From Anthoceros angustus (Eukaryota > Plantae > Anthocerotophyta), in assembly GCA_010909165.1 (NCBI GenBank), contig VJWM01000272.1:62001-126000 (forward strand): DNA of 64,000 nucleotides, read 5' to 3'. Positions 3,001-54,862 of the stretch are shown here, piece after piece (positions within the stretch are counted from its first letter, which is position 1; each line of letters starts with the position of its first letter). The position numbers and the translations under genes were made by a program. Under the pieces are notes generated by a model that saw only the letters and a program-made list of their open reading frames with translations, was not told the origin of the DNA and did no database searches.

Positions 3001-4145
3001 CTCTTCCTCCTTTGGGCGGTTGTAGGCCGCCTCAAAACCTCAAGGTCCATCAATCACCCGTTGGTTGTCCTGCGTTCGGGCTTCAACATCGCGCCCTTGC
3101 CGGCCCTATCTTTCCCTTCGCCTTGAGGGGCTGCGGGACTCGCCCTCTTCCTCCTTTGGGCGGTTGTAGGCCGCCTCAAAACCTCAAGGTCCATCGCTGG
3201 GATCCTCCGGAGGTTCTTGGACCGGACCTCCTTGTTGGCCGCCAACATCTTCCGGCGAACTCCGGACCCGGTGACACCGAGCGTCGAACGGCTGGAACAC
3301 GTCCAAATGCCACTCCTCCACCAATTCTCCGCTTCCTCCGGCCATGGCCCAAAGTCCGGATAGCGGGTCACAATGTTGCGCTCTACCGGTTCCATGGCTC
3401 CCAGACCTCCACAGCCTTTTTGGGTGCCATCGCCTTCTTCTCCCTTCGTTCTGGCTTGCGAGGCGGGCGGCACGATCGCCCTCTTCGCGCGTGCTCCAAC
3501 CTTACGCCGCGCGAAGATGCCTGAGCGTTCAAAGAGATGGCGCCAGAGGCGGGTTGCGGAGCGCAAGAGACTGCGAGAATCGCCTCGAGGTCGCGCCGAG
3601 AAATGACCCTCCTCGTCTGCCACGCCGTTGGAGGTAACCGGGAGGAAGGTGCCTCTTCTGTCATGTTGCGCTCTACCGGTTCCATGGCTCCCGGACCTCC
3701 TCGTCGCCACGCCGTTGGAGGTAACCGGGAGGAAGGTGCCTCTTCGCGCGTGCTCCAACCTTACGCGCCGCGCTCTCGGGCGTGAGTACCGCCCTCTTCG
3801 CCGCGCCCTTGCCGGCCCCTACGGTCTGATGCGCATGCCCGTCCACCTCTCAACACCATCACGTGGCGCCCGCCTAACTTACGCTCGAACTTCTAAGTTA
3901 CCTTACTTGGCGTACTTATCCCATTTGCTCCGGAGTGGGGTCCGGACTTACCTGGTCCGTTCTGTGCGCGGTCCGTCCCAACCCTTGGTGTTCAGTTCGT
4001 AGCTCCTCCGGAGTCCTGGGACCTACTCCGGAGTGTAGTCCGGAGTATTCCGGACCTATTCCTTCCTTTCCGCCTTATTTCTACTTCGGACCTATGCAAA
4101 AAAAACAAAACCGACTCATTTCCTAACCCTAAGAAGTCCGTAGTC
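1..4145 (-). mobile_element. Scrambled, GC-rich retroelement-like region made of shuffled repeated segments
   Basis: The same 30-150 bp segments recur in shuffled order, e.g. ctcttcctcctttgggcggttgtaggccgcctc at ~867, 1617, 1740, 3001 and 3145. Minus-strand fragments such as LLVFLHALQRGKRADWGRIIF resemble retroelement accessory ORFs. No RT or integrase motif was seen. Confidence 0.35.
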
Positions 4146-5089
4146 CATGCCTATTTACAGTCCATGTCATTTACGAAGGAACATATTGTATCTCGATTCG
4201 GGCATTTTGTGCTTCGTATGAGGGTTGTGTAGGGGCACATTAGTTGAAGGTGTTCTTCGACATGAATGTGTGGCATCCCTCACTCTATGCAAACATAGGA
4301 GACACGAGTGTATCGGCTAAGCTAGTCAAAGCGGTGGCTGCAAAGGACCGATGCTATGCTCACTACACGCAGCCTTGGAGAGTCTTCGATGGCGCACCAG
4401 CTCGACACTCATTTTAAAGGCCAACATAGAGTATGCAACCGTGGTGAATGGTCATGTCATTTTGGGACAAAAGAGGACCTTGCGAGCTGAGCGAGTTCCA
4501 AGGTTCAAGCTCTCAATCTGTGAATAGTCTTTTCCGCTAGGTGTCCATATTCCGCACATGTAGTTTTTAGCATTACACAAGTAGGATGTTTCTTGCAAAC
4601 TCGAGGTGTACATTATAGGATCAAAATCTAGCGGGAGAAAAGATCTGAAACTTCTACACTATCCCCGCAAGTAGTGCAAGTGAAAGAAGAGCCTATTGTT
4701 GGGAGTACTTATCCTAACCATGGTGTAGAAGCGGGAAAACGAAGAGGTTTGGCGGTGATTGTGAGTATGGAAGTGACAGACTGGAGGAGGCTGTAGGCAG
4801 AGGCGACTTGAAGCTCTTTTGAGACTTTGGCATTTGAATCGATATATTAGTGGACGGTTACGAGAGTGTGAAAGCACGATTTAGGGCGTTGCCAAACTCC
4901 CTACCTAGCTAAGGACGATTGCTTTTTGTGTTGCATCAATGCTCATGGGGGATTGAAGAAGATGGCACAGTACATTCTCATAAGCGGAGCACGGAGAAGC
5001 TATATGTTGATGATGACATCTTGAAGCCCATCTCTGAATCCACATGGATGAGAGACAAGCCCAAGGTGTTTTTGATCAATACTTGTCGA

Positions 5090-5613
5090 GAATCGCCTCG
5101 AGGTCGCGCCAGAAATGACCCTCCTCGTCGCCACGCTTGGAGGTAACCGGGAGGAAGGTGCCTCTTCAGAATCGCCGAGGTCGCATGGCTTACTCGGTCT
5201 TACGCGCGTGCTCCAACCTTACGCGCGTGCTCCAACCTTACGCCGCCGCTCTCGGGCGTGAGTACCGCCTCGTGCCACTGGCCCCTACGGTCTGATGCGC
5301 ATGCCCGTCCACCTCTCAACACCATCCACGTGGCGCCGTCCTGCCTAACTTACGCTCGAACTTCTAAGTTACCTTACTTGGCGTACTTATCCCATTTGCT
5401 CCGGAGTGGGGTCCGGACTTACCTGGTCCGTTCTGTGCGCGGTCCGTCCCAACCCTTGGTGTTCAGTCCGTAGCTCCTCCGGAGTCCTGGGACCTACTCC
5501 GGAGTGTAGTCCGGAGTATTCGGACCTATTCCTTCCGCCTTATTTCTACTTGGACCTATGCAAAAAACAAAACCCGACTCATTTCCTAACCCTAAGGGAA
5601 GTCCGTAGTCCAC
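5090..5613. repeat. Second copy of the element-end segment (matches ~3575-4145), ending ...GTCCGTAGTCCACA at the junction with the COR-tail sequence
   Basis: Direct repeat of 3760-4145. It ends in CA, as LTRs do, immediately before gctatttacagtccatgtc, where homology to the Roco gene at ~22057 starts. Confidence 0.6.
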
Positions 5614-5628
5614 AGCTATTTACAGTCC

Positions 5629-6018
5629 ATGTCATTTCTGAAGGAACATATTGTATCTCAGATTCGGGCATTTTGTGCTTCGTATGAGGGTTGTGTAGGG
5701 GACACATTAGTTGAAGGTGTTCTTCGACATGAATGTGTGGCATCCCTCACTCTATGCAAACATAGGAGACACGAGTGTATCCTGACAGCTAAGCTAGTCA
5801 AAGCGGTGGCTGCTGCAAAGGACCGATGCTATGCTCACTACACGCAGCCTTGGAGAGTCTTCGATGGCGCACCGAGCTCGACACTCATTTTAAAGGCCAA
5901 CATAGAGTATGCAACCGTGGTGAATGGTCATGTCATTTTGGGACAAAAGAGGACCTTGCGAGCTGAGCGAGTTCCAAGGTTCAAGCTCTCAATCTGTGAA
6001 TAGTCTGCTTTCCGCTAG
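5629..6018 (+). CDS. C-terminal COR-region fragment of a TORNADO1-like Roco protein (5'-truncated paralog)
   Basis: MSFLKEHIVSQIRAFCASYEGCVGDTLVEGVLRHECVASLTLCKHRRHECI is nearly identical to the translation at 22071-22230 of the downstream Roco gene. Confidence 0.8.
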
Positions 6019-7082
6019 GTGTCCATATTCCGCACATGTAGTTTTTAGCATTACACAAGTAGGATGTTTCTTGCAAACTCGAGGTGTACATTATAGGATC
6101 AAAATCTAGCGGAGAAAAGATGCTGAAACTTCTACACTATCCCATAAGTAGTGCAAAGAAGAGCCTATTGTTGGGAGTACTTATCCTAACCATGGTGTAG
6201 AAGCGGGAAAACGAAGAGGTTTGGCGTGATTGTGAGTATGGAAGTGGACGGACTGGAGGAGGCTGTAGGCAGAGGCGACTTGAAGCTCTTTTGAGACTTT
6301 GGCATTTGAATCGATATATTAGTGGACGGTTACGAGAGTGTGAAAGCACGATTTAGGGCGTTGCCAAACTCCCTACCCTAGCTAAGGACGATTGCTTTTT
6401 GTGTTGCATCAATGCTCATGGGGGATTGAAGAAGATGGCACAGTACATTCTCATAAGCGGAGCACGGAGAAGTCAGTATGTTGATGATGACATCTTGAAG
6501 CCCATCTCCGAATCCACATGGATGAGAGACAAGCCCAAGGTGTTTTTGATCAATACTTGTCGAGGCCTGGTAGCCTTATCACAAGCGAAGGCTAAGGACT
6601 CTAAAGTTGAGAGTAGCCAAATTGTGAGCAAGAGAGCCGGAGAAGTCCGACTCGATTCGGGCATTTTGTGCTTCGTATGAGGGTTGTGTAGGGGACACAT
6701 TAGTTGAAGGTGTTCTTCGACATGAATGTGTGGCATCCCTCACTCTATGCAAACATAGGAGACACGAGTGTATCACAGCTAAGCTAGTCAAAGCGGTGGC
6801 TGCAAAGGACCGATGCTATGCTCACTACACGCAGCCTTGGAGAGTCTTCGATGGCGCACCAGCTCGACACTCATTTTAAAGGCCAACATAGAGTATGCAA
6901 CCGTGGTGAATGGTCATGTCATTTTGGGACAAAAGAGGACCTTGCGAGCTGAGCGAGTTCCAAGGTTCAAGCTCTCAATCTGTGAATAGTCTGCTTTCCG
7001 CTAGGTGTCCATATTCCGCACATGTAGTTTTTAGCATTACACAAGTAGGATGTTTCTTGCAAACTCGAGGTGTACATTATAG

Positions 7083-7916
7083 GATCAAAATCTAGCGGAG
7101 AAAAGATCTGAAACTTCTACACTATCCCATAAGTAGTGCAAAGAAGAGCCTATTGTTGGGAGTACTTATCCTAACCATGGTGTAGAAGCGGGAAAACGAA
7201 GAGGTTTGGCGTGATTGTGAGTATGGAAGTGGACGGACTGGAGGAGGCTGTAGGCAGAGGCGACTTGAAGCTCTTTTGAGACTTTGGCATTTGAATCGAT
7301 ATATTAGTGGACGGTTACGAGAGTGTGAAAGCACGATTTAGGGCGTTGCCAAACTCCCTACCCTAGCTAAGGACGATTGCTTTTTGTGTTGCATCAATGC
7401 TCATGGGGGATTGAAGAAGATGGCACAGTACATTCTCATAAGCGGAGCACGGAGAAGTCAGTATGTTGATGATGACATCTTGAAGCCCATCTCCGAATCC
7501 ACATGGATGAGAGACAAGCCCAAGGTGTTTTTGATCAATGCTTGTCGAGGCACTGGTAGCCTTATCACAAGCGAGAAGGCTAAGGACTCTAAAGTTGAGA
7601 GTAGCCAAATTGTGAGCAAGAGAGCCGAGAAGTCCGACTCACATTCATGAAAGATTGTCTCATCTTCTTCTCGACAAGTCATGGACAACGATCCTTGAGA
7701 TCTTGAGAAAGGCACATACTTTATCACGGCTTTGATGAAAGCCATCATTCAAGGGTCTCAAGAAGGGATGATGTATGACATTTTAACATCGATTATTGCC
7801 GAGGTCACGAGATAGAAGTCAAGCTCCCAAGTGAAGCGAAGCCGCTCGAGAAGAGATCCCGATGTCCCGAGTTGTACTCCACACTCACAAGAAAGCTTTG
7901 CTGGTCTTTACCATAA
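7083..7916 (+). pseudogene. Additional frameshifted caspase-like copy (p20 + p10)
   Basis: Contains CCINAHGG, KPKVFLINACRGTGSLITSEKAK and FFSTSHGQRSLR. It has many indels relative to the 8650-9501 copy. Confidence 0.75.
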
Positions 7917-8649
7917 GTTCACTCACCGGCCGACGGAGTTCGGTGTGGCCATGTTCCTTCATCCGTAACTGTAATAGAATCATCGTTCCCAACAAGACAC
8001 TAATGGTGCAAGAAATTGCTTCTAATGAGGCCTTCTCATTTGTCCTTTTCTCATTTCTTGCTCGATGGCTCGCACACAATTTGGAGGAGAAACGACTCTT
8101 CCGTGGATGAACCTGTAGGTGAGAGCTCATGGACTTTAGGGAGGAAAGAACAAGGGAGTTATGGAGTCAGTACTCTTTGGTTTCAAGAAGCAAGTCCATG
8201 TCATTCAAGGAACATATTGTATCTCGATTCGGGCATTTTGTGCTTCGTATGAGGGTTGTGTAGGGGCACATTAGTTGAAGGTGTTCTTGACATGAATGTG
8301 GCATCCCTCACTCTATGCAAACATAGGAGACACGAGTGTATCCGACTAAGCTAGTCAAAGCGGTGGCTGCAAAGGACCGATGCTATGCTCACTACACGCA
8401 GCCTTGGAGAGTCTTCGATGGCGCACCAGCTCGACACTCATTTTAAAGGCCAACATAGAGTATGCAACCGTGGTGAATGGTCATGTCATTTTGGGACAAA
8501 AGAGGACCTTGCGAGCTGAGCGAGTTCCAAGGTTCAAGCTCTCAATCCTGTGAATAGTCTTTTCCGCTAGGTGTCCATATTCCGCACATGTAGTTTTTAG
8601 CATTACACAAGTAGGATGTTTCTTGCAAACTCGAGGTGTACATTATAGG

Positions 8650-9501
8650 ATCAAAATCTAGCGGAGAAAAGATCTGAAACTTCTACACTATCCCATAAGT
8701 AGTGCAAGGCGTGAAAGAAGAGCCTATTGTTGGGAGTACTTATCCTAACCATGGTCTAGAAGTAGGAAAACGAAGAGGTTTGGCAATTATTGTGAGTATG
8801 GAAGTGGACAGACCTGGAGGAGCTGTAGACAGAGGGCGACTTGAAGCTCTTTTTGGGACTTTGGCATTTGATACTGATATATTAGTGGACGGTTCTGAGA
8901 GTGTGAAAGCACGATTTAGGAGCGTTGCCAAACTCCCTACCCTAGCTAAGGACGATTGCTTTTTGTGTTGCATCAATGCTCATGGGGGGATTGAAGAAGA
9001 TGGCACACAGTACATTCTCATAAGCGGAGCACGCCGGGAGAAGCTGTATGTTGATGATGACATCTTGAAGCCCATCTCTGAATCCACATGGATGAGAGAC
9101 AAGCCCAAGGTGTTTTTGATCAATACTTGTCGAGAACAGCCTTATCACAAGCGAGAAGGCTAAGGACTCTAAAGTTGAGAGTAGCCAAATTGTGAGCAAG
9201 AGAGCCGGAGAAGTCCGACTCACATTCATGAAAGATTGTCTCATCTTCTTCTCGACAAGTCATGGACAATCCTTGAGATCTTGAGAAAGGCACATACTTT
9301 ATCACAGCTTTGATGAAAGCCATCATTCAAGGGTCTCGAAGAAGGGATGATGTGTACAGCATTTTAACATCAGTTATTGCCGAGGTCACAGAGATAGAAG
9401 TCAAGCTCCCAAGTGAAGCAGGAAGCCGCTCTGAGAAGAGATCCCAGTGTCCCGAGTTGTACTCCACACTCACAAGAAAGCTTTGCTGGTCTTTACCGTA
9501 A
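8650..9501 (+). CDS. Caspase-like cysteine protease domain (clan CD, peptidase C14; p20 + p10), frameshifted in this assembly
   Basis: p20 reads KRRGLAIIVS...DRPGGAVDRGRLEALFGTLAFD...DCFLCCINAHGG...WMRDKPKVFLINTCR. p10 reads KDCLIFFSTSHGQ.SLR...GTYFITALMKAI...DDVYSILTSVIAEV...QCPELYSTLTRKLCW. Motif order and spacing match the caspase fold. Confidence 0.85.
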
Positions 9502-10029
9502 GTTCACTCACCTGGCCGACGGGAGTTCGGTGTGGCCATGTTCCTTCATCCGTAACCAGATTGTAATAGAATCATCGTTCCCAACAAGACACTAATGGTG
9601 CAAGAAATTGCTTCTAATGCGGCCTTCTCATTTGTCTTTTTCTGCTCATTTCTTGCTCAGTGGCTCGCACACAATTTGGAGGAGAAACGACTCCTTCTGT
9701 GGATGAACCTGTAGGTGAGAGCTCATGGACTTTAGGGAGGAAAGAACAAGGGAGTTATGGAGTCAGTACTCTTTGGTTTCAAGAAGCAAGTCCGGATGTA
9801 AGCGTTCCTCGACCGAATGACTTCTAGTCCTTTTGCATATTAGATGTGTGTTCCATCTTCTTGAGCGGCCGGACATGATGTCCCTCATCAAACCGCTGAG
9901 GCTTGCATTTCTTTCACGATGAGAAAACACAAAGCGCGACAAGAGCTCACAGAGTGGTGCCAAACCCTCATCTCCGTGTTAGGGCTATGACATTTTGTTG
10001 TTGAAACTGGATAAGGTTACTTTTCATGC

Positions 10030-10870
10030 ATCACCGACAAAAGACAAACATGTATGTAAGTTTGTGTTGTCCTTCCAGTTGTGCCGGTGACAACAGAATG
10101 TCTGCGTGCCGTTCTAGGACTTTGAACAGTTTCGCGGAAATGGCGAGGTCCAGTGTGGGAACTTGCTTTGTGTAAACCTGTGGATGACACTTACCTAGAA
10201 TCATTTGTGCCGGAATTTTAGAACCTGTTGTCACAGCTTGATCGAGGTTGAACACCGAGATCAATCACCCCGAAGGAGCAGCGAAACTTTGATGCGATGC
10301 TAGCGTGTTCCGGGAGCGAGAGCAAGCTGGGAAGCTATGCACAATTTGTATAGCATGATTGTGGCCAGAACTCGGTAAGCAACCTGGTGCCACCAGTCGG
10401 TAGAAGCACCCTAGCGCCGGTCCTTCTACTAGCCTTCATGGGTAGCGTATATGACTATATAATCGCCATGTCTATCCATGACAATCTTTGTTTCTGTTTA
10501 TGTTTATCCTTGTCTATATTGCTATGATTATTTGCAAGGTACAATTCTCAATTAGAGTATAGAGTACTTTACTAGGACTTACAACAAAAATATATATTTA
10601 CTTTTAAATATCTAGAATGACAACAAAGAAGCCTTTTATAGTCCACTTGGACAGAATTTCCTTAACAACTTGTATCATGGTGCACACCTCAAGAAAAACG
10701 TGCTCAACAAAAACAGAACCCTGGAACATGGAGGAACGCCAATCACGCTCGTGTTTGAGTCACGGATCTGAGTACTAAGACATGAGTCAAGTCTCCGGGT
10801 ACTAAGACATGAGTCACATCTTTGAGTACGAAAACAATACTAATAGGCTAAAAATGGACAGACTCTTCTA
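10030..10870 (-). mobile_element. Possible LTR retrotransposon remnant (LTR-like segment, degenerate PBS, gag-like fragment)
   Basis: Minus-strand TATA-like ctataaaaggc at ~10631-10641. Short direct repeats (gtactaagacatgagtca x2) at ~10772-10816. aacctggtgccacca at 10381-10395 loosely resembles the reverse complement of a tRNA-iMet PBS. Support is weak. Confidence 0.25.
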
Positions 10871-11495
10871 ATGAGGGCCGAATGCAATATGTAAACGCCA
10901 GTGTGTGGAGCGTGAGTGGCACAAGAAGATGCCAGTAGGTCAGACTGCATACCCGATCATCGGTACATGTACTTGATGAGCAACAACTGAGGCCCCCAGC
11001 AACACAGCATTTGACGGCGAGCATAGACGCATGGGAACAAGTTAGAACTCATCCTGGAAGTCAGCCGTCAGTGTGTCAACCTTCAGGCTCTCAACATGGA
11101 GTTGATTCTTAGGACTTGTAGAAGTCAGCAGAGCAATGCATGTCTGCAACTACCGGTGGTGAGGAACTGCCGACCTGGCACCTCCTGATGTTGCAAATCA
11201 CTGCATGATGCATTCTTTGACAGATGCTATATGCTTGGTTTGGTTGCAGCGGAGGCATCTGGGCAGGCACGATGGCGGGAGAAGTCGCTGGCTATCTCTC
11301 CGCAGTGATGCCGGTTCATGTCAGATAAGGTAAATTGGGCACTTGTGGTGATGATGCTCATGTGTTTGCACTGTTTGGGGCCGGTGTTTTGATCACGCCC
11401 CAATGCAGGCAGCCCCAAGTTCGTGTAATGGGTACACAGCACAGCAAGGGAGGTAAACCACGTGAAGAGGAACATCTGAGTAAGGAGTAAGGCCG

Positions 11496-12625
11496 TTGAG
11501 GTCCTGGACCTTCTGGTGCAGCCAGGGTGGTATGTACACGTCCGCATCTTTCTTCCATCAGGTCATCAAGAGGTGCATTGCACACAAAGATCTGGGTGCT
11601 GGCAGGTGTGCATACCCTGATTGTCAGAAGTGGGTATGTGGCAGCAGATTCTTGGCTAATCACGTCATCCGCGTGTATGCTGCCTATGGGAGGTTGGAGG
11701 ATGCGTTGCAGGTTTTGAATGGATTGGCTGCTCCCAATGCTTATTCGTGGTCCTCCAGAGTTGAGGCACATGTTGACAATGGACAGGCCAGGCAGGCAAT
11801 CGAGATCTATTTGAGGATGGACAGTCATCCCCTATGTTGGCAGATAATCATCTGTTTGTGGCAGCATTTAAGGCTTGTGCCAGTGCAGAAGATCTGACAT
11901 CAGGCAGACAGGTCCATTCCGATGTCCTGAGTAGTGTGCTTGAGCCTGATGTGTTTGTTGGGAGCTGCCTGGTGGAAATGTATGCAAGATGTGGGAGGTT
12001 GGATGATGCTCGCACAATCTTTGACAAGTTGGACTCGAGAAACGTGGTCACATGGAATACGGTGCTTGGAGGGTATGCTCAGGGTGGGCGTGGGCAAGAA
12101 GCCCTTGCGCTCTATGCAAGTATGCAAGAGGAGGAATCCACCTGCCTGACCATGTCACGTTTTGTGCCTCCTCAAAGCATGTGCTAGCAGTGGAACACGA
12201 CACCAGGAAGGCAGCTTCATTCACAAATACAGGAAGCAGGTGTCGGATCTGAGGTGATGGTGGGAGCTGCCTCATAGATATGTATGCAAGATGTGGAAGC
12301 TTGGATGATGCCCGGACTGCCTTTGACAACATGACCAGAAGAAATGTGGTGACCTGGAACGTGATGCTCGCAAGATATGCTGATGGTGGGCTAGGTGAAG
12401 AAGCCCTGTCTCTTTATGCAACTATGCAACAGGAGGGCGTTACTTCAGCAGATCACGTAACTTTGTGTGCCTTCTGAAAGCATGTAAAAGCATCGGGGCA
12501 TTGGAGCAGGGAAGGCAGCTACATGACCAGGTTCAGGAGATGGGCTGCAAGTTGACGTGGTCATTTCGAGCTGCCTGGTGGACATGAATGCAAAGTGTGG
12601 GAGCTGAGAGGATGCCCGCAGGGTG
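11496..12625 (+). pseudogene. PLS-class pentatricopeptide repeat protein, frameshifted and lacking E/DYW domains
   Basis: Motifs include FLANHVIRVYAAYGRLEDALQV, DVFVGSCLVEMYARCGRLDDARTIFDKLDSRNVVTWNTVLGGYAQGGRGQEALALY and MYARCGSLDDARTAFDNMTRRNVVTWN. Confidence 0.85.
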
Positions 12626-13189
12626 TGACTGCCATTGCTTCTGGGAAGCTACGTGCATCCACGACTTGCTCCAAAGACAGCTCACCTTGGGAGCATCACG
12701 TGGCAGAGGAATATACCTGTTCTACAAAGCAGTCTTAGTGAGATGAAAGAGCATCGCTTGACGGGGTCAAGAGGAACGTGCCTCATGTTCTGAAGTTCTG
12801 GAGCCCAGCAGACAGTGTACGGATTGGGGCTGGACATCTCGCTTCCTTTCACGGAAGAGCCATCTTCATGGACGAAAGAGAGAGTGCAGCGCTCCTGAGG
12901 CTGACAGCCACTCACAAGGCATCCGACAAAGCACAGAAAAATGTCGTCCGAAACCACTGGTGTCAGGAATGCCTTGTCGTGCAAAGTCCACAGTGTAGAC
13001 AGGTTGGGAACAAGTAGCTAGAGGGCGCCTTTGCAGGCGTGCAGAAGTTGCTCCACTGCATGCTTCTCCGCGCCGCTGGCCAGCACTGGCCAGCAGAAGT
13101 GGATTCGAATCTCCCAATCACACTTGCACGCTTTTGTTGCAACTTGCAAGAGCCCACATTGATCCATATAAGATAATTGGGATGAGCAG

Positions 13190-16100
13190 GAAGTGGAGTG
13201 GGACGCCGTTTGCTCTGCTTGCCTTTTCTTGCAAGTCCTCCTGAGAAGGTGGGACGTTGTTGTGGAGGTTGGGCTATGGCGGATCCATCTCTTCCTGCCG
13301 GCGCCGCTGGTGGACCTGCTCGAGATCCTCGAGTCCCGCTCGCCGCAGCTGCGTGCGTTGCTTGCAGAGCTGGAGTCCGACTCGCCAAAGCGGCAGGAAC
13401 TGCCATCTGTTGATTCGTGGGAAGCTACTTCAATTGCGACTGCCAGGACGGGGAATGTCACCACCGCGAGGAGTGGCACTGGGCGGTGCGCTTGCGTCTG
13501 CTCACCGCTATCGGCAGATGCCGTACGCTCAGGAAGATTCAACTGAATCCTCTGTGGAAGAGGGTCACAGCGTGAGGCGGGACGAGGCGTTGGCGCTCTT
13601 TTCAGGCTTGCAACACAACCTTGTGCTGGAGGAGCTGAATCTGTTTGGCTACAAGGGGTTTGGGACGGCAGCAGCGTGCCTCCAGGCACTGAGTGCCGTC
13701 ATCGACAGAACTCATCGCTCACTGGACTTCCTCGGTCTGCAATCTGTGGGATTGAGTGCAGAAGGACTGGGTGCCATCGCTGCAGCCCTTGGACGCAATG
13801 TCAGCTCTTCAGTGCTGTCCAGATTGTCTCTGTGTGGAACGACATCAGGAATGCTGTCGGGGCGCAACACTTGGCCGACATCCTTACCAAGTCGCCCAAG
13901 CTGCGCAATCTCTGGATGAGCACCATAGGCATGGACGAGGAAGGAGCCGTGGTGATTGCAGGCCCTGGCGCATACCACTACACTGGCTGGGCTTAGAATC
14001 GGAGATCCTGCGCCCCGGAATCCAAACCGGCCCGCGCCCATGTTCCTCGTTCCATTGCTCCAAGCTTTGGTGTGGCACACCCTGGCGGATCCTCCAGCTG
14101 CTGTTTCTGGCAATCACTCCATCACACGGCTTGTCCTTGAGTGTCCGGGAGGCCAGGAGGCTGTGGAGCCGGGGCTGGGAGAAGCCCTGGCTCGGGTGCT
14201 ACGCACCAACCGGGCGCTGAAAGACCTCAGACTATCCAGCTTCTTCATCACACGCGGATTGGGAGCTCTGCGGGAAAACAGCAGCATCACCAAACTCCTG
14301 GTGTTTCACTCGCGGCAGTCGGAGGATGATGACATGGATCCCATCCTGACCACCATCCTGGATGAGTGCAAGACTGTTGAGGAGGTTCAGATCCGGTTTG
14401 ACAAGCCCTTTGGTCCGTCCAGCTTCACCAAGGCGTTTTTCAAGGGTTGCTGCAGAAAACCGCAGCATCAACAGGCTGGTGTTGGATGGCTGGGATGGCT
14501 GGACGACGAGATGTTTGAAGACCTGATTCAATCCCTGTCTACCAACACCAACACCCACCTCAGGCTGGATCACATCTCCATCAAGGGCACCTCATGGGAA
14601 AAGCAAGGCAGGGGCGAACGTCTGGAGAAAGCGTTGGGAGCTGCGCGAGTGCAGCCGCAGCTGCGTGCGTTGCTCGCAGACTTGGAGTCCGAGTCGCCAG
14701 TGCTGCAAGAACTCCCATCTGTGGATTTGTGGGAAGCTATTTCGATTGCCTTTGCCAGGAGGCCTACAGGAGTGTCAACACCGGGGCAGTGGCAGTGGTA
14801 CGTACGCCTGCGCCTGCTCACAGCTATCGGCAAATGCCGGTCGCTGAGGAAGATTCATCTGAATCCTCCGGGGAGGAGGGGCACTTACAGCGTGAGGAGG
14901 TAGAGGCGCTGGCTCTGCTATCAGGCTTGCAACACAACCTTGTGCTGGAGGAGCTGAATCTGTATGGCTACAAGGGGTTTGGGAGGGCACCCTGCCTGCA
15001 GGCATTGACTGGCGTCATGGAGAGATGCTATTTCTCATTGGACTTGCTGGGTCTGCAACATCTGGGATTGAGTGCAGAAGGACTGGGTGTCATCGCTGCA
15101 GCCCTTGGACGCAACCGCAGCTCAGTGCTGTCCAGATTGTCTCTTTGTGGGAACGACATCGGGAATGCTGTCGGGGCGCAACACTTGGCCGACATCCTTA
15201 CCAACTCGCCCAAGCTCCGCAATCTATGGATGAGCAACATAGGCATGAACGAGGAAGGAGCCGTGGTGATTGCACAGGCCCTGGCGCATACCACTACACT
15301 GGCTGGGCTTAGAATCGGAGATCCTGCGCCCCGGAATCCAAACCAGCCCGCGCCCATGTTCCTCGTTCCATTGCTCCAAGCTTTGGTGTGGCACACCCTG
15401 GCGGATCCTCCAGCTGCTGTTTCTGGCAATCACTCCATCACACGGCTTGTCCTCGAGTGTCCGGGAGGCCAGGAGGCTGTGGAGCCGGGGCTGGGAGAAG
15501 CCCTGGCTCAGGTGCTTCGCACCAACCGGGCTCTGAAAGACCTCACACTATCCAGCTTCTTCGTCACACGCGGATTGGGAGCTCTGCGGAAAACAGCAGC
15601 ATCACCAAACTCCTGGTGTTCCACTCGCGGCAGTCGGAGGATGATGACATGGATCCCAACCTGACCGCCATCCTGGATGAGTGCAAGACTGTTGAGGAGG
15701 TGCAGATCCGGTTTGACAAGCCCTTTGGTCCGTCCAGCTTCACCAAGGCGTTTTTCAAGGGTTGCTGCAGAAAACCGCAGCATCAACAGGCTGGTGTTGG
15801 ATGGCTGGGATGGCTGGACGACGAGATGTTTGAAGACCTGATTCAATCCCTGTCTACCAACACCAACACCAACACCCACCTCAGGCTGGATCACATCTCC
15901 ATCAAGGGCACCTCATGGGAAAAGCAAGGCAGGGGCGAACGTCTGGAGAAAGCGTTGGGAGCTGCGCGAGTGCAGCCGCAGCTGCGTGCGTTGCTCGCAG
16001 ACTTGGAGTCCGAGTCGCCAGTGCTGCAAGAACTCCCATCTGTGGATTTGTGGGAAGCTATTTCGATTGCCTTTGCCAGGAGGCCTACAGGAGTGTCAAC

Positions 16101-19100
16101 ACCGGGGCAGTGGCAGTGGTACGTACGCCTGCGCCTGCTCACAGCTATCGGCAAATGCCGGTCGCTGAGGAAGATTCATCTGAATCCTCCGGGAGGAGGG
16201 CACTTACAGCGTGAGGGAGGTAGAGGCGCTGGCTCTGCTATCAGGCTTGCAACACAACCTTGTGCTGGAGGAGCTGAATCTGTATGGCTACAAGGGGTTT
16301 GGGAGGGCACCCTGCCTGCAGGCATTGACTGGCGTCATGGAGATGCTATTTCTCATTGGACTTGCTGGGTCTGCAACATCTGGGATTGAGTGCAGAAGGA
16401 CTGGGTGTCATCGCTGCAGCCCTTGGACGCAACCGCAGCTCAGTGCTGTCCAGATTGTCTCTTTGTGGGAACGACATCAGGAATGCTGTCGGGCGCAACA
16501 CTTGGCCGACATCCTTACCAACTCGCCCAAGCTCCGCAATCTATGGATGAGCAACATAGGCATGAACGAGGAAGGAGCCGTGGTGATTGCACAGGCCCTG
16601 GCGCATACCACTACACTGGCTGGGCTTAGAATCGGAGATCCTGCGGAATCCAAACCAGCCCGCGCCCATGTTCCTCGTTCCATTGCTCCAAGCTTTGGTG
16701 TGGCACACCCTGGCGGATCCTCCAGCTGCTGTTTCTGGCAATCACTCCATCACACGGCTTGTCCTCGAGTGTCCGGGAGGCCAGGAGGCTGTGGAGCCAG
16801 GGCTGGGAGAAGCCCTGGCTCAGGTGCTTCACCAACCGGGCTCTGAAAGACCTCACACTATCCAGCTTCTTCGTCACACGCGGATTGGGAGCTCTGCGGG
16901 AAAACAGCAGCATCACCAAACTCCTGGTGTTCCACTCGCGGCAGTCGGAGGATGATGACATGGATCCCAACCTGACCGCCATCCTGGATGAGTGCAAGAC
17001 TGTTGAGGAGGTGCAGATCCGGTTTGACAAGCCCTTTGGTCCGTCCAGCTTCACCAAGGCGTTTTTCAAGGGTTGCTGCAGAAAACCGCAGCATCAACAT
17101 GCTGGTGTTGGATGGCTGGGATGGCTGGACGACGAGATGTTTGAAGACCTGATTCAATCCCTGTCTACCAACACCAACACCCACCTCAGGCTGGATCACA
17201 TCTCCATCAAGGGCACCTCATGGGAAAAGCAAGGCAGGGGCGAACGTCTGGAGAAAGCGTTGGGAGCTGCGCGAGTGCAGCCGCAGCTGCGTGCGTTGCT
17301 CGCAGACTTGGAGTCCGAGTCGCCAGTGCTGCAAGAACTCCCATCTGTGGATTTGTGGGAAGCTATTTCGATTGCCTTTGCCAGGAGGCCTACAGGAGTG
17401 TCAACACCGGGGCAGTGGCAGTGGTACGTACGCCTGCGCCTGCTCACAGCTATCGGCAAATGCCGGTCGCTGAGGAAGATTCATCTGAATCCTCCGGGAG
17501 GATGGGCACTTACAGCGTGAGGGAGGTAGAGGCGCTGGCGCTGCTATCTGGCTTGCAACACAACCTTGTGCTGGAGGAGCTTAATTTGCTTGGCTACGTG
17601 GGCTTTGGGACGGGACCCTGCCTGCAGGCATTGACTGGCGTCATGGAGATGCTATTTCTCATTGGACTTGCTGGGTCTGCAATATCTGGGATTGAGTGCA
17701 GAAGGACTGGGTGTCATCGCTGCAGCCCTTGGACGCAACCGCAGCTCAGTGCTGTCCAGATTGTCTCTTTGTGGGAACGACATCGGGAATGCTGTCGGGC
17801 GCAACATTTGGCCGACATCCTGAGGAATTCGATCGCCCTCCGCAATCTCTGGATGAGCAATATTGGCATGGATGAGGAAGGAGCCGTGCTGATTGCAGAG
17901 GCCCTGGCGAATACCACCACCCTGATCCGTCTCAGAATCGGAGACCCTGCGCCCCGGAATCCGAAGCAGCCGGCGCCCATGTTCATTGGTCCAATTCTCG
18001 AAGCTTTGGTGTGGCACACGCCGGATTCGGAGAATCAGGAGGATTGTCATCCTCTGCTTCTAGAGCCACTTCCAATCGCTCCATCAGGCTGCTTGTTCTT
18101 GAGTGCCCAGGAGGCCAGCAGGCCGTGGAGCCGGGACTGGGAGAAGCCCTGGCTCGGTGCTGCGCACCAACCGTGCTCTCACTGACCTCAGACTTGCCAG
18201 CTTCTTCGTCACACGCGGATTGGAAGCGCTACCTGAAAACAGCAGCATCACCCAACTCCAAGTAAGTCACACGCGGAATTCGGAGGATGATGACATGGAT
18301 CCTATGCTGATCACGATTCTTCAGGAGTGCAAGAATGTCCAGCAGCTGCAGCTTCAGTTTTATAAGCCCTTTGGTCCATCCAACTTCTCCAAGGCGTTTT
18401 TCCAAGGGTTGCGGGATAATCGTAGCATCAAGACGCTTGTGTTGGATGACTGCGAAGGATTGGATGACTACATGTTCCAGAACTTGATGCGGTCTCTGGG
18501 ACGCAACTGCAACAACGTCCTGGAGAACATTTCCATCAAGAAAACAACCTGGGAAAGCGAAGGCAAAGGAATATACATCCAGAATGCTCTCTCAAGGAAC
18601 ATGCGCAGAAGAAGCGCTGCTCCGCAGGGTAGGTGCCCCAAGCCAGTAGCTAGCTACCCTTGTCCTGATTTGTATCTACAGTCAGAACCCACAAACTCAG
18701 ATGTATACTGACCCCTTCTCACTTGTGCAGGTTCGGAAGAAGTGCCACCACCGGTCACTGCAACTGTGGCAACCTCTGGTGCCGCAGCAGGTAATGAAAC
18801 TACATGAATCCATGGATTTGATCCAACCACTGCCAAGCTGTTGTTGTTGTTGCAATTTGTACCGAATGCACCACTTGATGCTGCTGCTGGCAGGCAGTCT
18901 GATGATTGACTGATTGGCTGTTTTGTTTTCACCACAATTTCCAGTTGCTGTTCCTGAGGAGCTCAGTGCCCTGCTTGCCGAGCTCGACTCACCTTCGCCT
19001 ACACTCAGTAGTCTTCCTCGTGTGAAGCGTTTGGGCACTTGTTCAAGAGGGACGTGGAACATCCACAGGTGGAACTTGAACTGCGCATGCGCCTCATGAA

Positions 19101-22100
19101 GGCTATCGGAAAATGCCCCACACTCAGATTCATAGATCTCGACCTCTTGGGCGTCGAAATTACAGGGTGACGGTGGCAGAGGCGATGGCGCTGCTAGAAG
19201 GCCTGAGCTCGAATGCAATAGTGGAACGGCTGGACTTGAGTGGCTTCCTTGGTTTTGGAACAGGTGAAGTCTGCGCTGCAATCGCCGCTATCTTGCAATC
19301 CAGCCGCACCTTGCAATTTCTGAATATGGGATACACTGGCATGACTGTCGAAGGACTGGCTTGCATTGCCCTGCTGCGACATAATCGCAGCACTGTGCTT
19401 CGCACCTTGTATCTTTCTGGAAACACGACTGTGGGAGAAGGTGTTGGAGCTCAACACCTGGCTGATATCCTGACCAGCACTCCCGCTCTTCGCAACCTGG
19501 GGATGTGGGATACAGGGATGGATGAGGCGGGAGCATTGATGATAGGGGATGCTCTGGCTCAGAACACCACACTTGACTGGCTGAACATAGGATTCAATCA
19601 AGCGTGGAGGCCAAAGCAGGCAGGGATGATGGCCACGCTGTTAGCTCGAGCATTCACCCTGGCATGCTGGACGCAGACCAGGAGGCTGAAGGTGTTGCTC
19701 CCAAGCTTCCTTCTGTTAACGAGTCTGTCACACATCTCCAGCTGGAAGTATGGGGAGCAGGACAGCAGCCTGTCATCGCTGAGTTGGGAGAAGCTGTGGC
19801 CCGCATGCTGCGGTCGAACATGACTTTAAGGCATCTCGATGTATGTAGCTGCTTTATAAGCCAGGGATTGGAGGGCTGTGTGACAACAGCAGCGTTATCC
19901 GTGTGACAGTCCGACATGGTAGCTCTAGTGCTAAGGAGGACTACTGCAAGCTGATGCCAATACTGCAGAGTTGCCAGACAGTGGAAAAGTTTACAATTAG
20001 CTCAGAACAGTTTGGGACCTTTGGGATCATCCGACCTCCGAAGACGTTTTTCAAATCGTTGCAGGACAATCGTTACCTCAACAGGTTGGTGTTGGATGGC
20101 TGGAAAGGGTTGGACGACAATATGTTCCAAGACCTGTTGCGGGCTCTGCAAGTGAACACCAATTTGAAGAGTATATCGTTCGAGAACACTGTGTGGAAAA
20201 GTCAGGAAAAGGAGCTGCAGTGGATGAACTACTACGCCAAAACAGGGAATACCGGAAAGCTCTGGCAGGGCTCCAACAATGCCAGTGAAATCATGTCGCC
20301 TCGTACTTTGTGGATTTCCATATGCAGGTGAGCCACGTGCTGAACCCAAAGTTTGTACATCCCAAATGGCGTAGTTCGTGGCAGACTTCACTGCAGTTGT
20401 TTCTGTCTTCTACATCTGTTTTCTTGTCTTAACGTTGTTTTCGTCTCCGGAGTGTAATCGGTGGTAAATGTTGCTGTTTCAGGAAAACCACGATACGGAA
20501 TACGTTGATGAGTATGCAAACACACGAAAACGATGTTGAGATGGAGGGTGAAACGATTTCGAAGCACATACCTCGAACCCTTGGGTTTGAGGTTGAGGTG
20601 ATAAAAGATGGTCCAGCCTTGAGAATTACCGTTTGGGATCTTGCAGGGCACCAGGAGTTTCATGCTCTTCACGATTTCGTCTTTCCTGCTGTGAATAACT
20701 CTTCTCTCTTCTTGTTTGTGTATAACCCGTTCAAATTTGGTGGTAATTATTCAAGTGCGGAAATGAAGGATAGAAAGGATTTTCGAGATGAATTTATTTA
20801 TTGGCTTAAATTTATTGCTTCCAACTCACGGTTAGCTCAACAGGTGAAACCTTATGTTCATGTGGTGGTAACATTTGGTGACAAGCTTGAAGGTAGGATG
20901 TCTTGAAGGTTGCAATACGGGAGGAAGTGTTGGTGATGAAGAAAAAGTTCATGGCTGTTGTGGAAACATCCAATGAACCCACTTTCATCAATGGACAGAG
21001 TTGGAAAGATGTGTATGCACTACGCAGCCTTATAGAGGAAAAGCTACGCCAGCTTGTCAGCAAATTGGCCCCAATTCCCAATATTTGTGAGCAGACCCGT
21101 ATACATGTGCAAAGATGGGCTGAGGATCAACAAGGTATGCCAATCATTTCTGTTGAGAAGTTTAGTGAGTTGTTTCATAGCACATGTAAGGCGGCAATAG
21201 GGCATCCACTCATCTCAGAGGATTACAGAAGATTTCTTCGAGACTTCATGGACAAAGAGGATAGCTGGAAAGTAGTAGCATCATATCTCAAGGATTCAGG
21301 GGAGATAATATATTTCCAAATGTCACGGCTTATGGTCATCAACCTCCGATGGTTAGGAATGGGCGTTTTTGGTCAGCTGATTAGTATATTTGGTGAACCG
21401 GACAATAAGCAACATTGGCTTCAAGTTCAAAATGGGTTCATCAGCAAATATAGGTTGAGTAGCCTTCTAAAAATGTCTTTGAACAAGGTAGGGCTTGATG
21501 AAACTATTGTGAGCGAAGAACAATTTATCCAATTGATGCTTGAGTTACACCTTTGCCATGAAAGTAGAGATGAGGAAGGAGAAGTGCGTTATTTTGTTCC
21601 AATATGTATGTATAAAGAAGACGATGGATCAGGAGTTGACCAACAGTTAGTATGGCCTTCACACGGTGGTAATCTTCATGATTATATCTTTATGGGTTTG
21701 CGTCTACAATGCGATGATCAAGATTGTACATTCCTCACACCAGGATTTTTCCCTAGGTTACAGGTTTGTAACTTTTCTCAAGCTCACTATCTTTTGTTTT
21801 ATGTCCTTGGAAACTTCTTCTTTTGTTTTATTATTATTATTTACTGTTAACTAGTCTCATTGTTCCTATATATTGTAGGTACTTTTATACACATATTGTT
21901 TGACAAAAGGCTGGGTTGATGAGGAAAGACCAATTGATTCAGGAATAAAATTGGAGCGTAATGTTCTTTCAATATCTGCAGAGGCATTGGATATCTTTGT
22001 GGAATTTAATGCCGAAATCGGTTGCTACATAGATATACTGGCCCGATCTACTCAAGGCTATTTAGAGTCCATGTCATTTTTGAAGCAACATATTGTATCT

Positions 22101-22700
22101 CAGATTCGGGCATTTTGTGCTTCGTATGAGGGTTGTGCAGGGGTTACATTGGTTGAAGGTGTTCTTCGACATGAATGTGTGGCATCCCTCACTCTATGCA
22201 GACATAGGAGACACGAGTGTATCCCGAGATAAGCTAGTCAAAGCGGTGGCTGCTGCAAAGAATCGATGCTATGCTCACTACACGCACCGGAGAGTCTGAC
22301 GGCAGCACCCAGCTCTACACTCATTTTAAAGGCCAACATAGAGTATGCAACCGTGGTGAATGGTCATGTCATTTTGGGACAAAAAGAGGACCTTGCCAGA
22401 GCCGAAGCAGAGTTCCAAGGTTCGAAGCTCTCAATCCTGTGAATCGTCTGTTTTTCGCTAGGTGTCCATACTCTGCACATGTAGTTTTTCTGTAGCATTA
22501 CACAAGTAGGCCGTTTCTTGCAAACTCTGAGGCTGTACCTGTTGCAGGATCAAAATCTAGCAGCAGAGAAGTTGCTGAGACTTCTATGCAGCTATCCCCG
22601 CAAGTAGTGCAAGGTGTGCAGAAAGAAGAACCTGTTGTTGGGAATAGTTATCCTAACCATGGTGTGGAAGCAGGCAAACGAAGAGGTTTGGCAATAAATT
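13190..22700 (+). CDS. TORNADO1-like Roco protein: RNI-like LRR array - Roc GTPase - COR - start of a caspase domain (multi-exon, frameshifted as assembled; 5' start uncertain)
   Basis: LRR motifs LSRLSLCGNDIG and LRNLWMSNIGMNEEGAVVIAQAL. P-loop CRLVLCGFPYAG|KTT is split by an intron at 20328-20482, and one A must be restored in a homopolymer. G3 reads ITVWDLAGHQEFHALHDFVFP. COR reads LQCDDQDCTFLTPGFFPRLQ|V across an in-frame intron at 21764-21878. These match my recollection of plant TRN1 motifs. Confidence 0.88.
13343..18600 (+). repeat. Four tandem ~1.31-kb LRR-module repeats, followed by a diverged fifth module at ~18960-20280
   Basis: ccgcagctgcgtgcgttgct occurs at 13343, 14655, 15976 and 17281. 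Each unit encodes ALLADLESESP...HNLVLEELNL...LDDEMFEDLIQSL. Confidence 0.9.
22462..22547 (+). other. Predicted 86-bp GT-AG intron joining the COR exon to the caspase exon
   Basis: Donor g|GTGTCC and acceptor TTGCAG|ga. The downstream exon reads openly as GSKSSSREVAETSMQLSPQVVQGVQKEEPVVGNSYPNHGVEAGKRRGLAI. The acceptor is conserved as TAG|ga in the upstream copies. Confidence 0.6.
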
Positions 22701-22970: not shown

Positions 22971-23629
22971 ATCTTCACTTAGGGGTTTTTTCTCTTTTCC
23001 AGATTCTATTATTGCAGGAATTTGCTCGAAAGAAATGTGGAAAATAAGAACCAACCACATTCAACTTTTCAACTTACCGGATATTTGATTATGCTTCATC
23101 AATAGTCTCTAGGGCAGACTCAAAATAGCGTTAATTTTCATTATGCCCTATGTGTAACTCACAACCGTGGCCGGAAATTGGCCCTTAGTGGACTTAAATA
23201 AAATTCTTCTTCTTCTTCTTCTTCTTACATCAAAACTCCGCAGTTAAGCGCCCTTGGGCCGGATTGGTGACCTCCCGGGAAGTCCCGATGCTGCATGCAC
23301 CCTTCGTCTCATCTTTTCTTCCACTCCTTTTTTTTTTTTTCCCCTTCTTCTTCTTCTTTCCATTTTGAGCTCTAGAGTTCTTTGCTTTCCTTTCCCCGAA
23401 TTTTATTGAAGTCCACTAAGAACGGATTTCCTTCATGTGACTCATTTGTGAGTTACAGGCATAATGAGAATTAATCGCTATTCGAGTCGCCTTCAAACTA
23501 GTGTTGTGAAGCATAATCAAATATCTGGCGTTGAAAAATTGAATATGTTGCGTTCTTATTTCCCACAATTTGTTTCAAGCAAACTCCGCAATAATAGGGT
23601 CAAGAATGAGAGAAAACCGGAGTGAAGAT
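22971..23629. repeat. Imperfect inverted repeat (arms ~22971-23206 and ~23398-23629), MITE/foldback-like
   Basis: cttagtggacttaaataaaattc pairs with gaattttattgaagtccactaag. gatatttgattatgcttca pairs with tgaagcataatcaaatatc. atcttcact pairs with agtgaagat. Confidence 0.8.
23228..23302 (+). pseudogene. 5S rRNA-derived fragment (3' two-thirds, with an internal deletion)
   Basis: catcaaaactccgcagttaagcgcccttgggccggattggtgacctcccgggaagtcccgatgctgca matches plant 5S around box A and box C. The 5' part and the AGTACT segment are missing. A T-run follows. Confidence 0.75.
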
Positions 23630-28389: not shown

Positions 28390-29376
28390 ATGGCGGCGGA
28401 GGAAGGGAAGGCGCGGCCGGGGGTGCTGCTGGCGGTGCGGGTGAGCGAGTACCTGGAGAAGGCGCTGGAGAGCAGGTACGCGCTGCACCGGCTGTACGCG
28501 GCGCCATTGAGGGAGGCGGAGCGGGCGGAGTGGCTTGGCGCCATCGCTCCGGCGGTGCGCGCGGTGGTCGGCAGCGCGGCGGGCGCGGCCTCTGCAGAGC
28601 TCATCGCGCAGCTGCCGGCGCTGGAGCTGGTGGCGTGCAACAGCGTGGGAACGGACAAGGTGCATCTTCCGAGCTGCAAGGAGCGGGGGATCGCGGTGAG
28701 CAACACGCCGGACGTGCTCACAGACGACTGCGCGGATTTGGCTTTGGCTCTGATGCTGACTTCCTCCCGCCGCCTGGTGGCCGCGGACGGCTACCTGCGG
28801 CAGGGGCTGTGGGAGGCGCAGGGGGACTTCCCGCTGGCGACCAAGGTGTCAGGGAAGCGGGTAGGGATCGTGGGGCTGGGCCGCATCGGGTTGGCTGTGG
28901 CCTCCCGGGCGCGCGCCTTCGGGTGCGCCATCTCTTACCACGGCCGGGGCCGAAAACAGGAGGCGGACTCGCAGGGTTTCCGCTTCTTTGACAGCGCGGA
29001 GGGCCTGGCGCGGGAGTCGGACTTCCTCGTCCTCTGCTGCCCGCTCACCAGGGACACCGCGGGGCTGGTGGACAGGAAGGTGCTTGACGCGCTTGGCCCC
29101 AAAGGCACGCTCATCAACATCGCGCGTGGTCCCGTGGTGGACGAGCCGGAGCTGGTGCTGGCCCTGCTGGAGGGCCGCCTCGGCGCCGCGGGCTTGGATG
29201 TCTACCAGGACGAGCCCCGCGTGCCGAAGGCGCTGTGCGGGTTGGACAATGTTGTGCTGCTCCCGCATGTGGCCAGCGCGACTGTGGAGACTCGCACAGC
29301 CATGGCTGACCTCGTGTTGGAGAACTTGGCCGCGCATTTCGCAGGGAAACCGCTCATTACACCTCTCGATTTCTAG
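28390..29376 (+). CDS. HPPR: Hydroxyphenylpyruvate reductase / glyoxylate-hydroxypyruvate reductase (D-2-hydroxyacid dehydrogenase family)
   Basis: Intact ORF with SVGTDKV, VSNTPDVLTDDCADLA, the Rossmann motif VGIVGLGRIG, LINIARG, GLDVYQDEP and LPHVASATVETR. ATG at 28390. Confidence 0.93.
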   Translation: MAAEEGKARPGVLLAVRVSEYLEKALESRYALHRLYAAPLREAERAEWLGAIAPAVRAVVGSAAGAASAELIAQLPALELVACNSVGTDKVHLPSCKERGIAVSNTPDVLTDDCADLALALMLTSSRRLVAADGYLRQGLWEAQGDFPLATKVSGKRVGIVGLGRIGLAVASRARAFGCAISYHGRGRKQEADSQGFRFFDSAEGLARESDFLVLCCPLTRDTAGLVDRKVLDALGPKGTLINIARGPVVDEPELVLALLEGRLGAAGLDVYQDEPRVPKALCGLDNVVLLPHVASATVETRTAMADLVLENLAAHFAGKPLITPLDF

Positions 29377-54841: not shown

Positions 54842-54862
54842 TATATATATATATATATATAT
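54842..54862. repeat. (TA)n microsatellite (mirrored at ~59251-59274)
   Basis: Directly visible. Confidence 0.9.

What the first reader, a model, noticed from the sequence alone, without database searches (positions are those of the whole stretch)
4150..22700. Plant Roco-caspase fusion: LRR-Roc-COR-caspase, a candidate receptor/switch/executioner system
Seen: the 3' end of the TORNADO1-like gene (22057-22695) is collinear with the 5' part of the upstream repeat units. It covers the COR tail, a short intron and an exon reading EEPVVGNSYPNHGVEAGKRRGLAI. In the upstream units the same exon continues into a complete caspase-like p20+p10. Overlapping the two paralogs gives LRR array - Roc - COR - caspase. 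Established: Roc-COR modules dimerise in a nucleotide-dependent way, caspases are activated by induced dimerisation, and angiosperm TRN1 has no protease domain. Inference: an LRR sensor could control COR-mediated dimerisation of the protease, making an NLR-like immune or cell-death module built on a Roco GTPase. I know of no description of this architecture in land plants, but I could not run a search.
Basis: partly seen in the sequence, partly recalled or inferred. Interest (0 to 1): 0.95.

Follow-up and report, generated by a model that had tools for sequence, protein, structure and literature searches.

The report
Broken plant Roco-caspase fusion gene copies
This stretch of plant DNA holds damaged pieces of a gene that joins a repeat-based sensor, a GTP switch and a protein cutter of the animal caspase type, which plants are said to lack; the same parts lie joined in open reading frames in other plant data, but what the protein does is untested.

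Summary
The domains are real: ribonuclease-inhibitor-type LRRs, Roc, COR-A and Peptidase_C14. The protease is of the animal caspase type (His, Cys and both Asp-pocket arginines kept). No copy in this window is whole. Gene G (13276-22695) stops inside the first caspase strand. Four tandem fragments (4151-9793) start in mid-COR; only two reach p10, and all carry frameshifts. The fusion is therefore inferred here by overlap, but independent contigs show it: L002 holds LRR-Roc-COR-caspase in open frames with the same two intron positions, and a hornwort (Nothoceros) transcript ORF joins COR tail to caspase. Many breaks look like long-read errors. LRR-Roc-COR-caspase is already described in bacteria (PMC8195603); I found no paper on it in plants. 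The same caspase clade sits beside NB-ARC-LRR genes and behind liverwort hydrolases. Likely role: sensor-gated, dimerisation-activated immune protease (inferred). This scan has already noted the family at several other places in this genome. Verdict: real family, new variant, damaged copies here.

The parts
13276..18628 (+). Gene G exon 1 (start codon is a candidate): four tandem LRR super-modules of about 440 codons
   Evidence: Self-BLAST; the majority consensus of the four modules is one open frame of 438 codons, while each copy has private 1-5 bp indels
18731..18790 (+). Gene G predicted mini-exon (20 codons, linker)
   Evidence: GT-AG introns join it in frame on both sides; prediction only
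18945..20327 (+). Gene G exon 3: fifth, diverged LRR module (ribonuclease-inhibitor type) and first half of the Roc P-loop
   Evidence: Pfam LRR_6; PDB hits to ribonuclease inhibitor, NOD2-like and RanGAP LRRs; 34-46% identity to modules 1-4
20483..21763 (+). Gene G exon 4: Roc GTPase (G3 motif DLAGH at 20637) and COR-A; one base short at the P-loop lysine and one more break near 20900
   Evidence: Pfam Roc E 8e-6 and COR-A E 2e-5; best PDB hit LRRK2 Roc; Atlas COR-A clusters score 0.97; junction check
21879..22419 (+). Gene G exon 5: COR C-terminal (COR-B-like) subdomain and tail; two frame breaks near 22227 and 22295
   Evidence: Model aligns to C. tepidum Roco residues 807-891, Z 5.8, rmsd 2.5, 79 residues, tied with unrelated folds; 25-40% identity to the segment before the caspase in L001, L002, L009
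22548..22695 (+). Gene G exon 6, cut short: linker and first residues of the caspase domain; homology to the units ends at 22695
   Evidence: Alignment with U1-U4; in-frame join
22971..23629 (.). Imperfect long inverted repeat (MITE-like, inference) in AT-rich DNA just after the break
4151..5090 (+). Unit U1: COR tail, intron, caspase p20 ending just after the catalytic Cys; 5 frame breaks in the caspase part
5615..6653 (+). Unit U2: COR tail, intron, p20 and part of the linker; 5 frame breaks
6654..8197 (+). Unit U3: COR tail, intron, p20, p10 and 3' flank; 8 frame breaks
8193..9793 (+). Unit U4: best-kept copy; caspase domain 8741-9498 with 2 frame breaks; pocket Arg 8810, His 8981, Cys 9128, second pocket Arg 9276
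   Evidence: Pfam C14, PDB caspase-2/-8/-6 hits, residue check
3574..4150 (.). Unrelated repeat DNA that precedes U1 and, duplicated at 5087-5614, precedes U2; marks the 5' truncation of the units

Best explanation
The window holds damaged members of a bryophyte (probably hornwort) gene family encoding LRR array - Roc - COR - caspase, about 3,100 residues if whole: one copy cut off at the start of the caspase, and a 5'-truncated paralog whose COR-tail-plus-caspase piece was duplicated four times. Intact family members most likely act as intracellular immune or cell-death receptors: the variable LRR array senses a ligand (inferred), this shifts the Roc nucleotide state (inferred from Roco biochemistry), COR-B brings two chains together (known for bacterial Roco, inferred here), and the paired caspase domains become active and cut after aspartate (dimer activation known for animal initiator caspases; specificity predicted from the two pocket arginines). 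Shown: domains, order, catalytic residues, the junction in independent contigs. Not shown: expression of this locus, activity, substrate, ligand.
For: Domains. Overlap of G and units over about 640 bp. L002: LRR, Roc-COR-A and COR-tail-plus-caspase exons in open frames on one 4-kb contig, introns at the same two positions as G. L001 and L009 also join COR-A, COR tail and caspase; L009 lacks the COR-A/B intron at exactly the predicted junction. Nothoceros aenigmaticus Trinity ORFs join COR tail and caspase. A model of the L002 protease matches caspase-9/-3/-8 at Z 28-29 against MALT1 22.6 and metacaspases 19 or less. The same caspase clade (SH support 0.91) lies next to NB-ARC-LRR genes and behind alpha/beta-hydrolases in Marchantia and Riccia, both contexts tied to NLR immunity. 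LRR modules vary in copy number by recent duplication. Bacterial precedent with caspase as effector (PMC8195603).
Against: No whole copy in the window and no read or transcript of this locus examined. L002 has a degenerate P-loop and L001 lacks the catalytic Cys, so some members are not full enzymes. COR-B identity rests on a middling Z score and position. The conserved pocket Gln is Asn throughout the clade. In CtRoco GTP gives monomers (PMC6337361), so the direction of the switch is unknown. The only characterised plant Roco, TORNADO1, acts in development (PMC4104024).
Confidence: 0.6

Rival explanations
1. Gene G is intact in the living plant: the small frame breaks, the cut at 22695 and the tandem units are products of an unpolished long-read assembly. 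(Concerns the state of this locus, not the family.)
For: Indels between tandem copies lie at CAG/CTG three times more often than chance (64 of 250, null 20.7 +/- 4.2) and at CG 1.5 times (92, null 61.5 +/- 6.7), as expected from methylation-linked base-calling errors (own knowledge). Breaks in G are mostly one-base shortenings of G or A runs. About ten such tandem arrays occur in the window.
Against: G and the units differ by about 6% substitutions, several synonymous, so they are different paralogs. The break at 22695 runs into an inverted-repeat element, and the units start behind repeat DNA. The units share 16 deletions against G and are as depleted of CWG as the transposon regions, as silenced DNA would be.
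Confidence: 0.2
2. The fusion is real but works as a scaffold, decoy or developmental regulator like TORNADO1, with the protease domain inactive or serving processing rather than immunity or death.
For: Pseudo-enzyme members exist (no catalytic Cys in L001; altered His in some NLR-adjacent copies; degenerate P-loop in L002). TORNADO1 acts in leaf patterning (PMC4104024).
Against: Most clade members, including U4, keep Arg-His-Cys-Arg. Rapid LRR duplication, many paralogs and linkage of the same caspase to NB-ARC-LRR genes fit immunity better.
Confidence: 0.22
3. The caspase exon is normally not joined: the last intron is retained or the caspase is a separate downstream transcript, giving a plain LRR-Roc-COR protein.
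For: The last intron has an in-frame stop and one candidate donor is weak; its splicing was not observed.
Against: In L001, L002 and the Nothoceros ORF the COR tail and caspase lie in one open frame with no intron; L009 is collinear across the junction, with frame shifts.
Confidence: 0.06
4. The caspase is animal or bacterial contamination in a plant assembly.
For: Nearest solved structures are animal caspases.
Against: It is continuous with intron-bearing plant-type gene sequence between PPR-E+ genes; its nearest relatives are from Nothoceros, Marchantia and Riccia; a pattern scan of prokaryotic genomes found no relative (limited sensitivity).
Confidence: 0.02

Closest known systems
Prokaryotic AP-GTPase (Roco) counter-invader proteins, LRR-Roc-COR-effector (Kaur et al. 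2021, PMC8195603)
   Same: Same domain order; caspase is listed among at least 24 C-terminal effectors; fast-evolving LRRs and many paralogs
   Different: Here a land-plant gene with introns, ribonuclease-inhibitor-type LRR super-modules and a caspase closest to animal caspases; descent from the bacterial proteins was not tested and no close prokaryotic relative was found
Angiosperm TORNADO1 (TRN1)
   Same: RI-like LRRs followed by Roc-COR (PMC4104024)
   Different: TRN1 has no protease and acts in development; here the LRR array is much longer and a caspase follows. Orthology not tested
Animal initiator caspases (caspase-8, -9, -2) and their platforms (inflammasome, apoptosome)
   Same: p20-linker-p10 fold, His-Cys dyad, two pocket arginines; activation by proximity is the proposed logic
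   Different: No CARD or DED; sensor, switch and protease are one chain; pocket Gln is Asn; activity untested
Brown-algal and other SAR Roco proteins with a C-terminal peptidase (PMC11378527)
   Same: LRR-Roc-COR plus protease, proposed immune receptors
   Different: Their peptidase is IPR009003 (trypsin-like clan, own knowledge), not a caspase
Plant metacaspases
   Same: Clan CD fold and His-Cys dyad
   Different: Metacaspases cut after Arg/Lys and score far lower in structure comparison (Z 19 against 29); none appears among sequence hits
Plant NLRs with atypical N-terminal domains (PMC11218826)
   Same: Sensor-switch-executioner logic; the same caspase clade lies next to NB-ARC-LRR genes
   Different: Switch is a Roc GTPase, not NB-ARC; executioner is C-terminal; caspase is not among the domains that paper mentions

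Membership tests
Roco proteins | Roc GTPase directly followed by COR | tested here: met
   Pfam Roc E 8e-6 then COR-A E 2e-5, LRRK2 Roc best PDB hit, Atlas COR-A
Roco proteins | Intact G motifs (P-loop GxxxxGKT, G3 DxxG, G4) | tested here: inconclusive
   G3 and a G4-like motif present; P-loop spans an intron and is one base short as assembled; degenerate in L002
Roco proteins | COR-B dimerisation subdomain | tested here: inconclusive
   Model matches CtRoco 807-891 at Z 5.8, tied with unrelated folds; no Pfam or Foldseek hit
Roco proteins | GTP hydrolysis and nucleotide-dependent monomer-dimer cycle | not testable with these tools
   Needs biochemistry
TORNADO1 orthologues | RI-like LRR plus Roc-COR | tested here: met
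TORNADO1 orthologues | Groups with TRN1 in a Roc-COR tree | not tested
   No TRN1 sequence was retrieved; the COR-A homolog search was blank
TORNADO1 orthologues | Ends after COR, no enzyme effector | tested here: not met
   Caspase follows
True (animal-type) caspases | Caspase fold with p20 and p10 | tested here: met
   Relative P0006: Z 29.5 to caspase-9, TM 0.83-0.9 by target to caspase-3/-7; window U4 aligns along it
True (animal-type) caspases | His-Cys catalytic dyad | tested here: met
   All four units
True (animal-type) caspases | Basic S1 pocket: Arg179, Gln283, Arg341 | tested here: inconclusive
   Both arginines kept in U4; Gln is Asn, as in the whole clade
True (animal-type) caspases | Cleavage after aspartate; activation by dimerisation | not testable with these tools
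   Needs assay
True (animal-type) caspases | Orthology to metazoan caspases | tested here: inconclusive
   Bryophyte sequences form their own clade near a Picozoa protein and unplaced environmental ones; deep nodes weak, no metacaspase or bacterial outgroup in the tree
Metacaspases | Acidic S1 pocket and closer fold match to metacaspases | tested here: not met
   Basic pocket; Z 19 or less
NLR (STAND) receptors | NB-ARC or NACHT ATPase | tested here: not met
   Central domain is Roc-COR; it may work like an NLR but is not one
Bacterial LRR-AP-GTPase-COR-effector systems | Domain order LRR, Roc, COR, variable effector | tested here: met
Bacterial LRR-AP-GTPase-COR-effector systems | Common descent of the fused unit | not tested
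   Only a pattern scan for the caspase, blank

The most novel reading that the evidence does not exclude
Bryophytes keep a lineage of genuine aspartate-specific caspases used as a swappable executioner on several immune receptor chassis (Roco GTPase in hornworts, NB-ARC-LRR in moss-like data, hydrolase in liverworts), and the Roco form is a one-chain inflammasome equivalent that triggers cell death, possibly by cutting the gasdermin-like proteins that other notes of this scan report near such genes (not checked here).
Probability: 0.35. Interest if true: 0.95.

Novelty: new variant of a known kind. Interest (0 to 1): 0.7.

Why it matters
Reviews up to 2026 still state that plants lack caspase orthologues (PMC13272413, PMC12521494). 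A land-plant protease with the animal caspase fold and Asp-pocket arginines, fused to a sensor and a GTPase switch, would qualify that statement and give a direct test of whether some plants run caspase-driven immunity. It would also offer a Roco protein with a simple enzymatic read-out of COR dimerisation. This particular locus adds little beyond the family, because its copies are broken and the scan has noted better copies elsewhere in the genome.

Tried and rejected
The message did not call the stretch human-like; I went on to send translated pieces of it, by reference, to protein-family, homolog, structure and Atlas tools. Nothing here looked human. The joined spliced model was not searched; exons were searched apart, by reference. 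The search for homologous proteins: COR-A piece blank; P0006 found only itself and P0004; the long-protein search found only liverwort hydrolase-caspases; all are length- and word-limited. The search for related loci: no usable pattern, then blank in metagenomes and prokaryotic genomes. The L002 Roc-COR exon has no Pfam hit of its own; it is placed by 27% identity to the window's COR-A. Paper searches found no plant Roco-caspase. The organism was not identified directly (blank); 'hornwort' rests on the Nothoceros relatives and on earlier notes. Substitution enrichment at CG/CWG was set aside, since deamination and base-calling error both give it. No gasdermin-like ORF was noticed in the window by eye; no profile search was run for it. 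One tree run gave no answer and was repeated with FastTree.
Full report
Setting. The window is land-plant DNA: it carries PPR-E+ genes, a 2-hydroxyacid dehydrogenase, lipoxygenase fragments and transposon-like DNA. The organism was not identified; the nearest named relatives with the same junction come from the hornwort Nothoceros aenigmaticus. The whole window is full of 0.5-1.7 kb head-to-tail duplications whose copies often differ as much by small indels as by substitutions.

What is in the finding. Gene G runs from a candidate start at 13276 to 22695 on the + strand. Exon 1 holds four LRR super-modules of about 440 codons; their majority consensus is one open frame of 438 codons, while each copy has its own 1-5 bp indels. 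A fifth, diverged module follows and matches LRR_6 and ribonuclease-inhibitor-type structures. Then come Roc (Pfam E 8e-6; best PDB hit LRRK2 Roc) and COR-A (E 2e-5; Atlas score 0.97). The next exon folds, in a model of moderate confidence, like the C-terminal COR subdomain of C. tepidum Roco (Z 5.8, tied with unrelated folds). Homology then stops at 22695, inside the first strand of the caspase, and AT-rich DNA with a long imperfect inverted repeat follows. The rest of G's caspase is not in the window.

Upstream lie four tandem units, U1-U4 (4151-9793). Each starts in the middle of the COR C-terminal exon, keeps the intron and continues into the caspase. They differ from each other by 0.1-2% substitutions and from G by about 6%, so they come from a paralog of G. 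U1 ends just after the catalytic Cys and U2 in the linker; U3 and U4 reach the end of p10. Frame breaks in the caspase part number 5, 5, 8 and 2.

Is the fusion real? Yes at family level. The p20 of U4 found 42 relatives among 1.84 billion representatives. Three of the best carry, N-terminal to the caspase, a segment matching G's COR exon. L002, a 4-kb Logan contig, holds an LRR exon, a Roc-COR-A exon and a COR-tail-plus-caspase exon, all open, with introns at the same two positions as G: within the P-loop and at the end of COR-A. L001 shows COR-A, the same intron, then COR tail and caspase in one frame. L009 is 45% identical to G's COR-A, lacks that intron at exactly the predicted junction and continues into a caspase, though with about four frame shifts. 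Two Trinity ORFs of Nothoceros join COR tail to caspase. The organisms behind L001, L002 and L009 are not named by the tools.

What kind of protease? The window's p20 hits only animal caspases in the PDB. A model of the intact L002 domain (pLDDT above 90 over most of it) aligns to caspase-9, -3 and -8 at Z 28-29, MALT1 at 22.6 and metacaspases at 19 or less. U4 keeps both S1 arginines and the His-Cys dyad; the pocket Gln is Asn, as in the whole clade. Aspartate specificity is thus predicted, not shown. In a FastTree tree the Roco-linked, NLR-adjacent and hydrolase-linked plant sequences form one clade (SH 0.91), next to a Picozoa protein and environmental sequences; deep nodes are weak, the root was an amphioxus caspase, and no metacaspase or bacterial outgroup was included, so origin is open. 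The same domain lies just upstream of NB-ARC-LRR genes in L003, L006, L008 and L011 and behind alpha/beta-hydrolase domains in Marchantia and Riccia.

Broken gene or broken assembly? Probably both. Indels between tandem copies sit at CAG/CTG three times more often than chance and at CG 1.5 times, while two control motifs are depleted; this is what methylation-linked long-read errors would give (own knowledge). G's breaks are mostly one-base shortenings of G or A runs, including one at the P-loop lysine. But the truncations look structural: the units begin behind repeat DNA, share 16 deletions against G's one, and are as poor in CWG as the transposon regions. I read the units as silenced fragments and G as a recently truncated or mis-joined copy. 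The joined spliced protein was not searched; exons were searched one by one.

Mechanism. Most likely an intact member is a one-chain receptor: LRR array as sensor, Roc-COR as nucleotide-gated dimerisation switch, caspase as output. COR's C-terminal half mediates dimer formation in C. tepidum Roco, where GTP favours monomers and the empty or GDP state dimers (PMC6337361); initiator caspases are activated by dimerisation (own knowledge). An immune role is inferred from LRR copy-number change, many paralogs and the link of the same caspase to NB-ARC-LRR genes. Against it: one intact relative has a degenerate P-loop and another lacks the catalytic Cys, and TORNADO1 acts in development (PMC4104024).

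Comparison and novelty. LRR-Roc-COR with a C-terminal caspase is listed among bacterial counter-invader proteins (PMC8195603), and brown algae have Roco proteins with another peptidase (PMC11378527). So the design is known. I found no paper describing it in plants (the library lacks most subscription papers), and a 2026 review still says plants lack caspase orthologues (PMC13272413). Annotated Marchantia and Riccia entries already carry 'caspase' labels in UniRef, so the domain is in databases though apparently not discussed. The scan has noted this family at several other places in this genome; those notes are unchecked leads, and I tested only the points listed.

Verdict. A real and surprising family, a new variant of a known kind, represented here by broken copies. 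Interest 0.7.

Noticed in passing
window 1-64000: About ten 0.5-1.7 kb head-to-tail duplications; small indels between copies cluster at CAG/CTG and CG, which suggests methylation-linked long-read errors across this assembly.
   Followed up: partly
window 29453-32226 (-): 3' fragment of a lipoxygenase gene repeated three times in tandem.
   Followed up: no
window 28390-29373 (+): Intact, intronless D-isomer 2-hydroxyacid dehydrogenase gene.
   Followed up: no
window 11500-12700 and 25500-28313 (+): PPR genes flank gene G on both sides; the right one has E and E+ motifs; both are frameshifted as assembled.
   Followed up: no
window 35348-36085 (+): DUF7869 ORF (E 2e-46), in a transposon-like region.
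   Followed up: no
window 48998-55686 against 58428-64000: Large inverted duplication of several kb, 78-88% identical.
   Followed up: no
L003, L006, L007, L008, L011: Caspase ORFs of the same clade directly upstream of NB-ARC-LRR ORFs, twice in tandem in L006; the second copy has lost the catalytic His, as in an active/inactive pair. Fusion by splicing not tested.
   Followed up: partly
P0008, P0011, P0058-P0062: Marchantia and Riccia proteins joining alpha/beta-hydrolase domains to the same caspase type.
   Followed up: partly
P0017: Picozoa caspase-ankyrin protein with the same Asn at the pocket Gln position; lies near the bryophyte clade with weak support.
   Followed up: no
L002:495-770 and L001:694-1977: Pseudo-enzyme members: L002 has a degenerate P-loop with an intact caspase; L001 has a caspase without the catalytic Cys.
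   Followed up: partly
window 22420-22560: The last intron has two in-frame donor-acceptor pairs and an in-frame stop, so retention would give a protease-free LRR-Roc-COR isoform.
   Followed up: no
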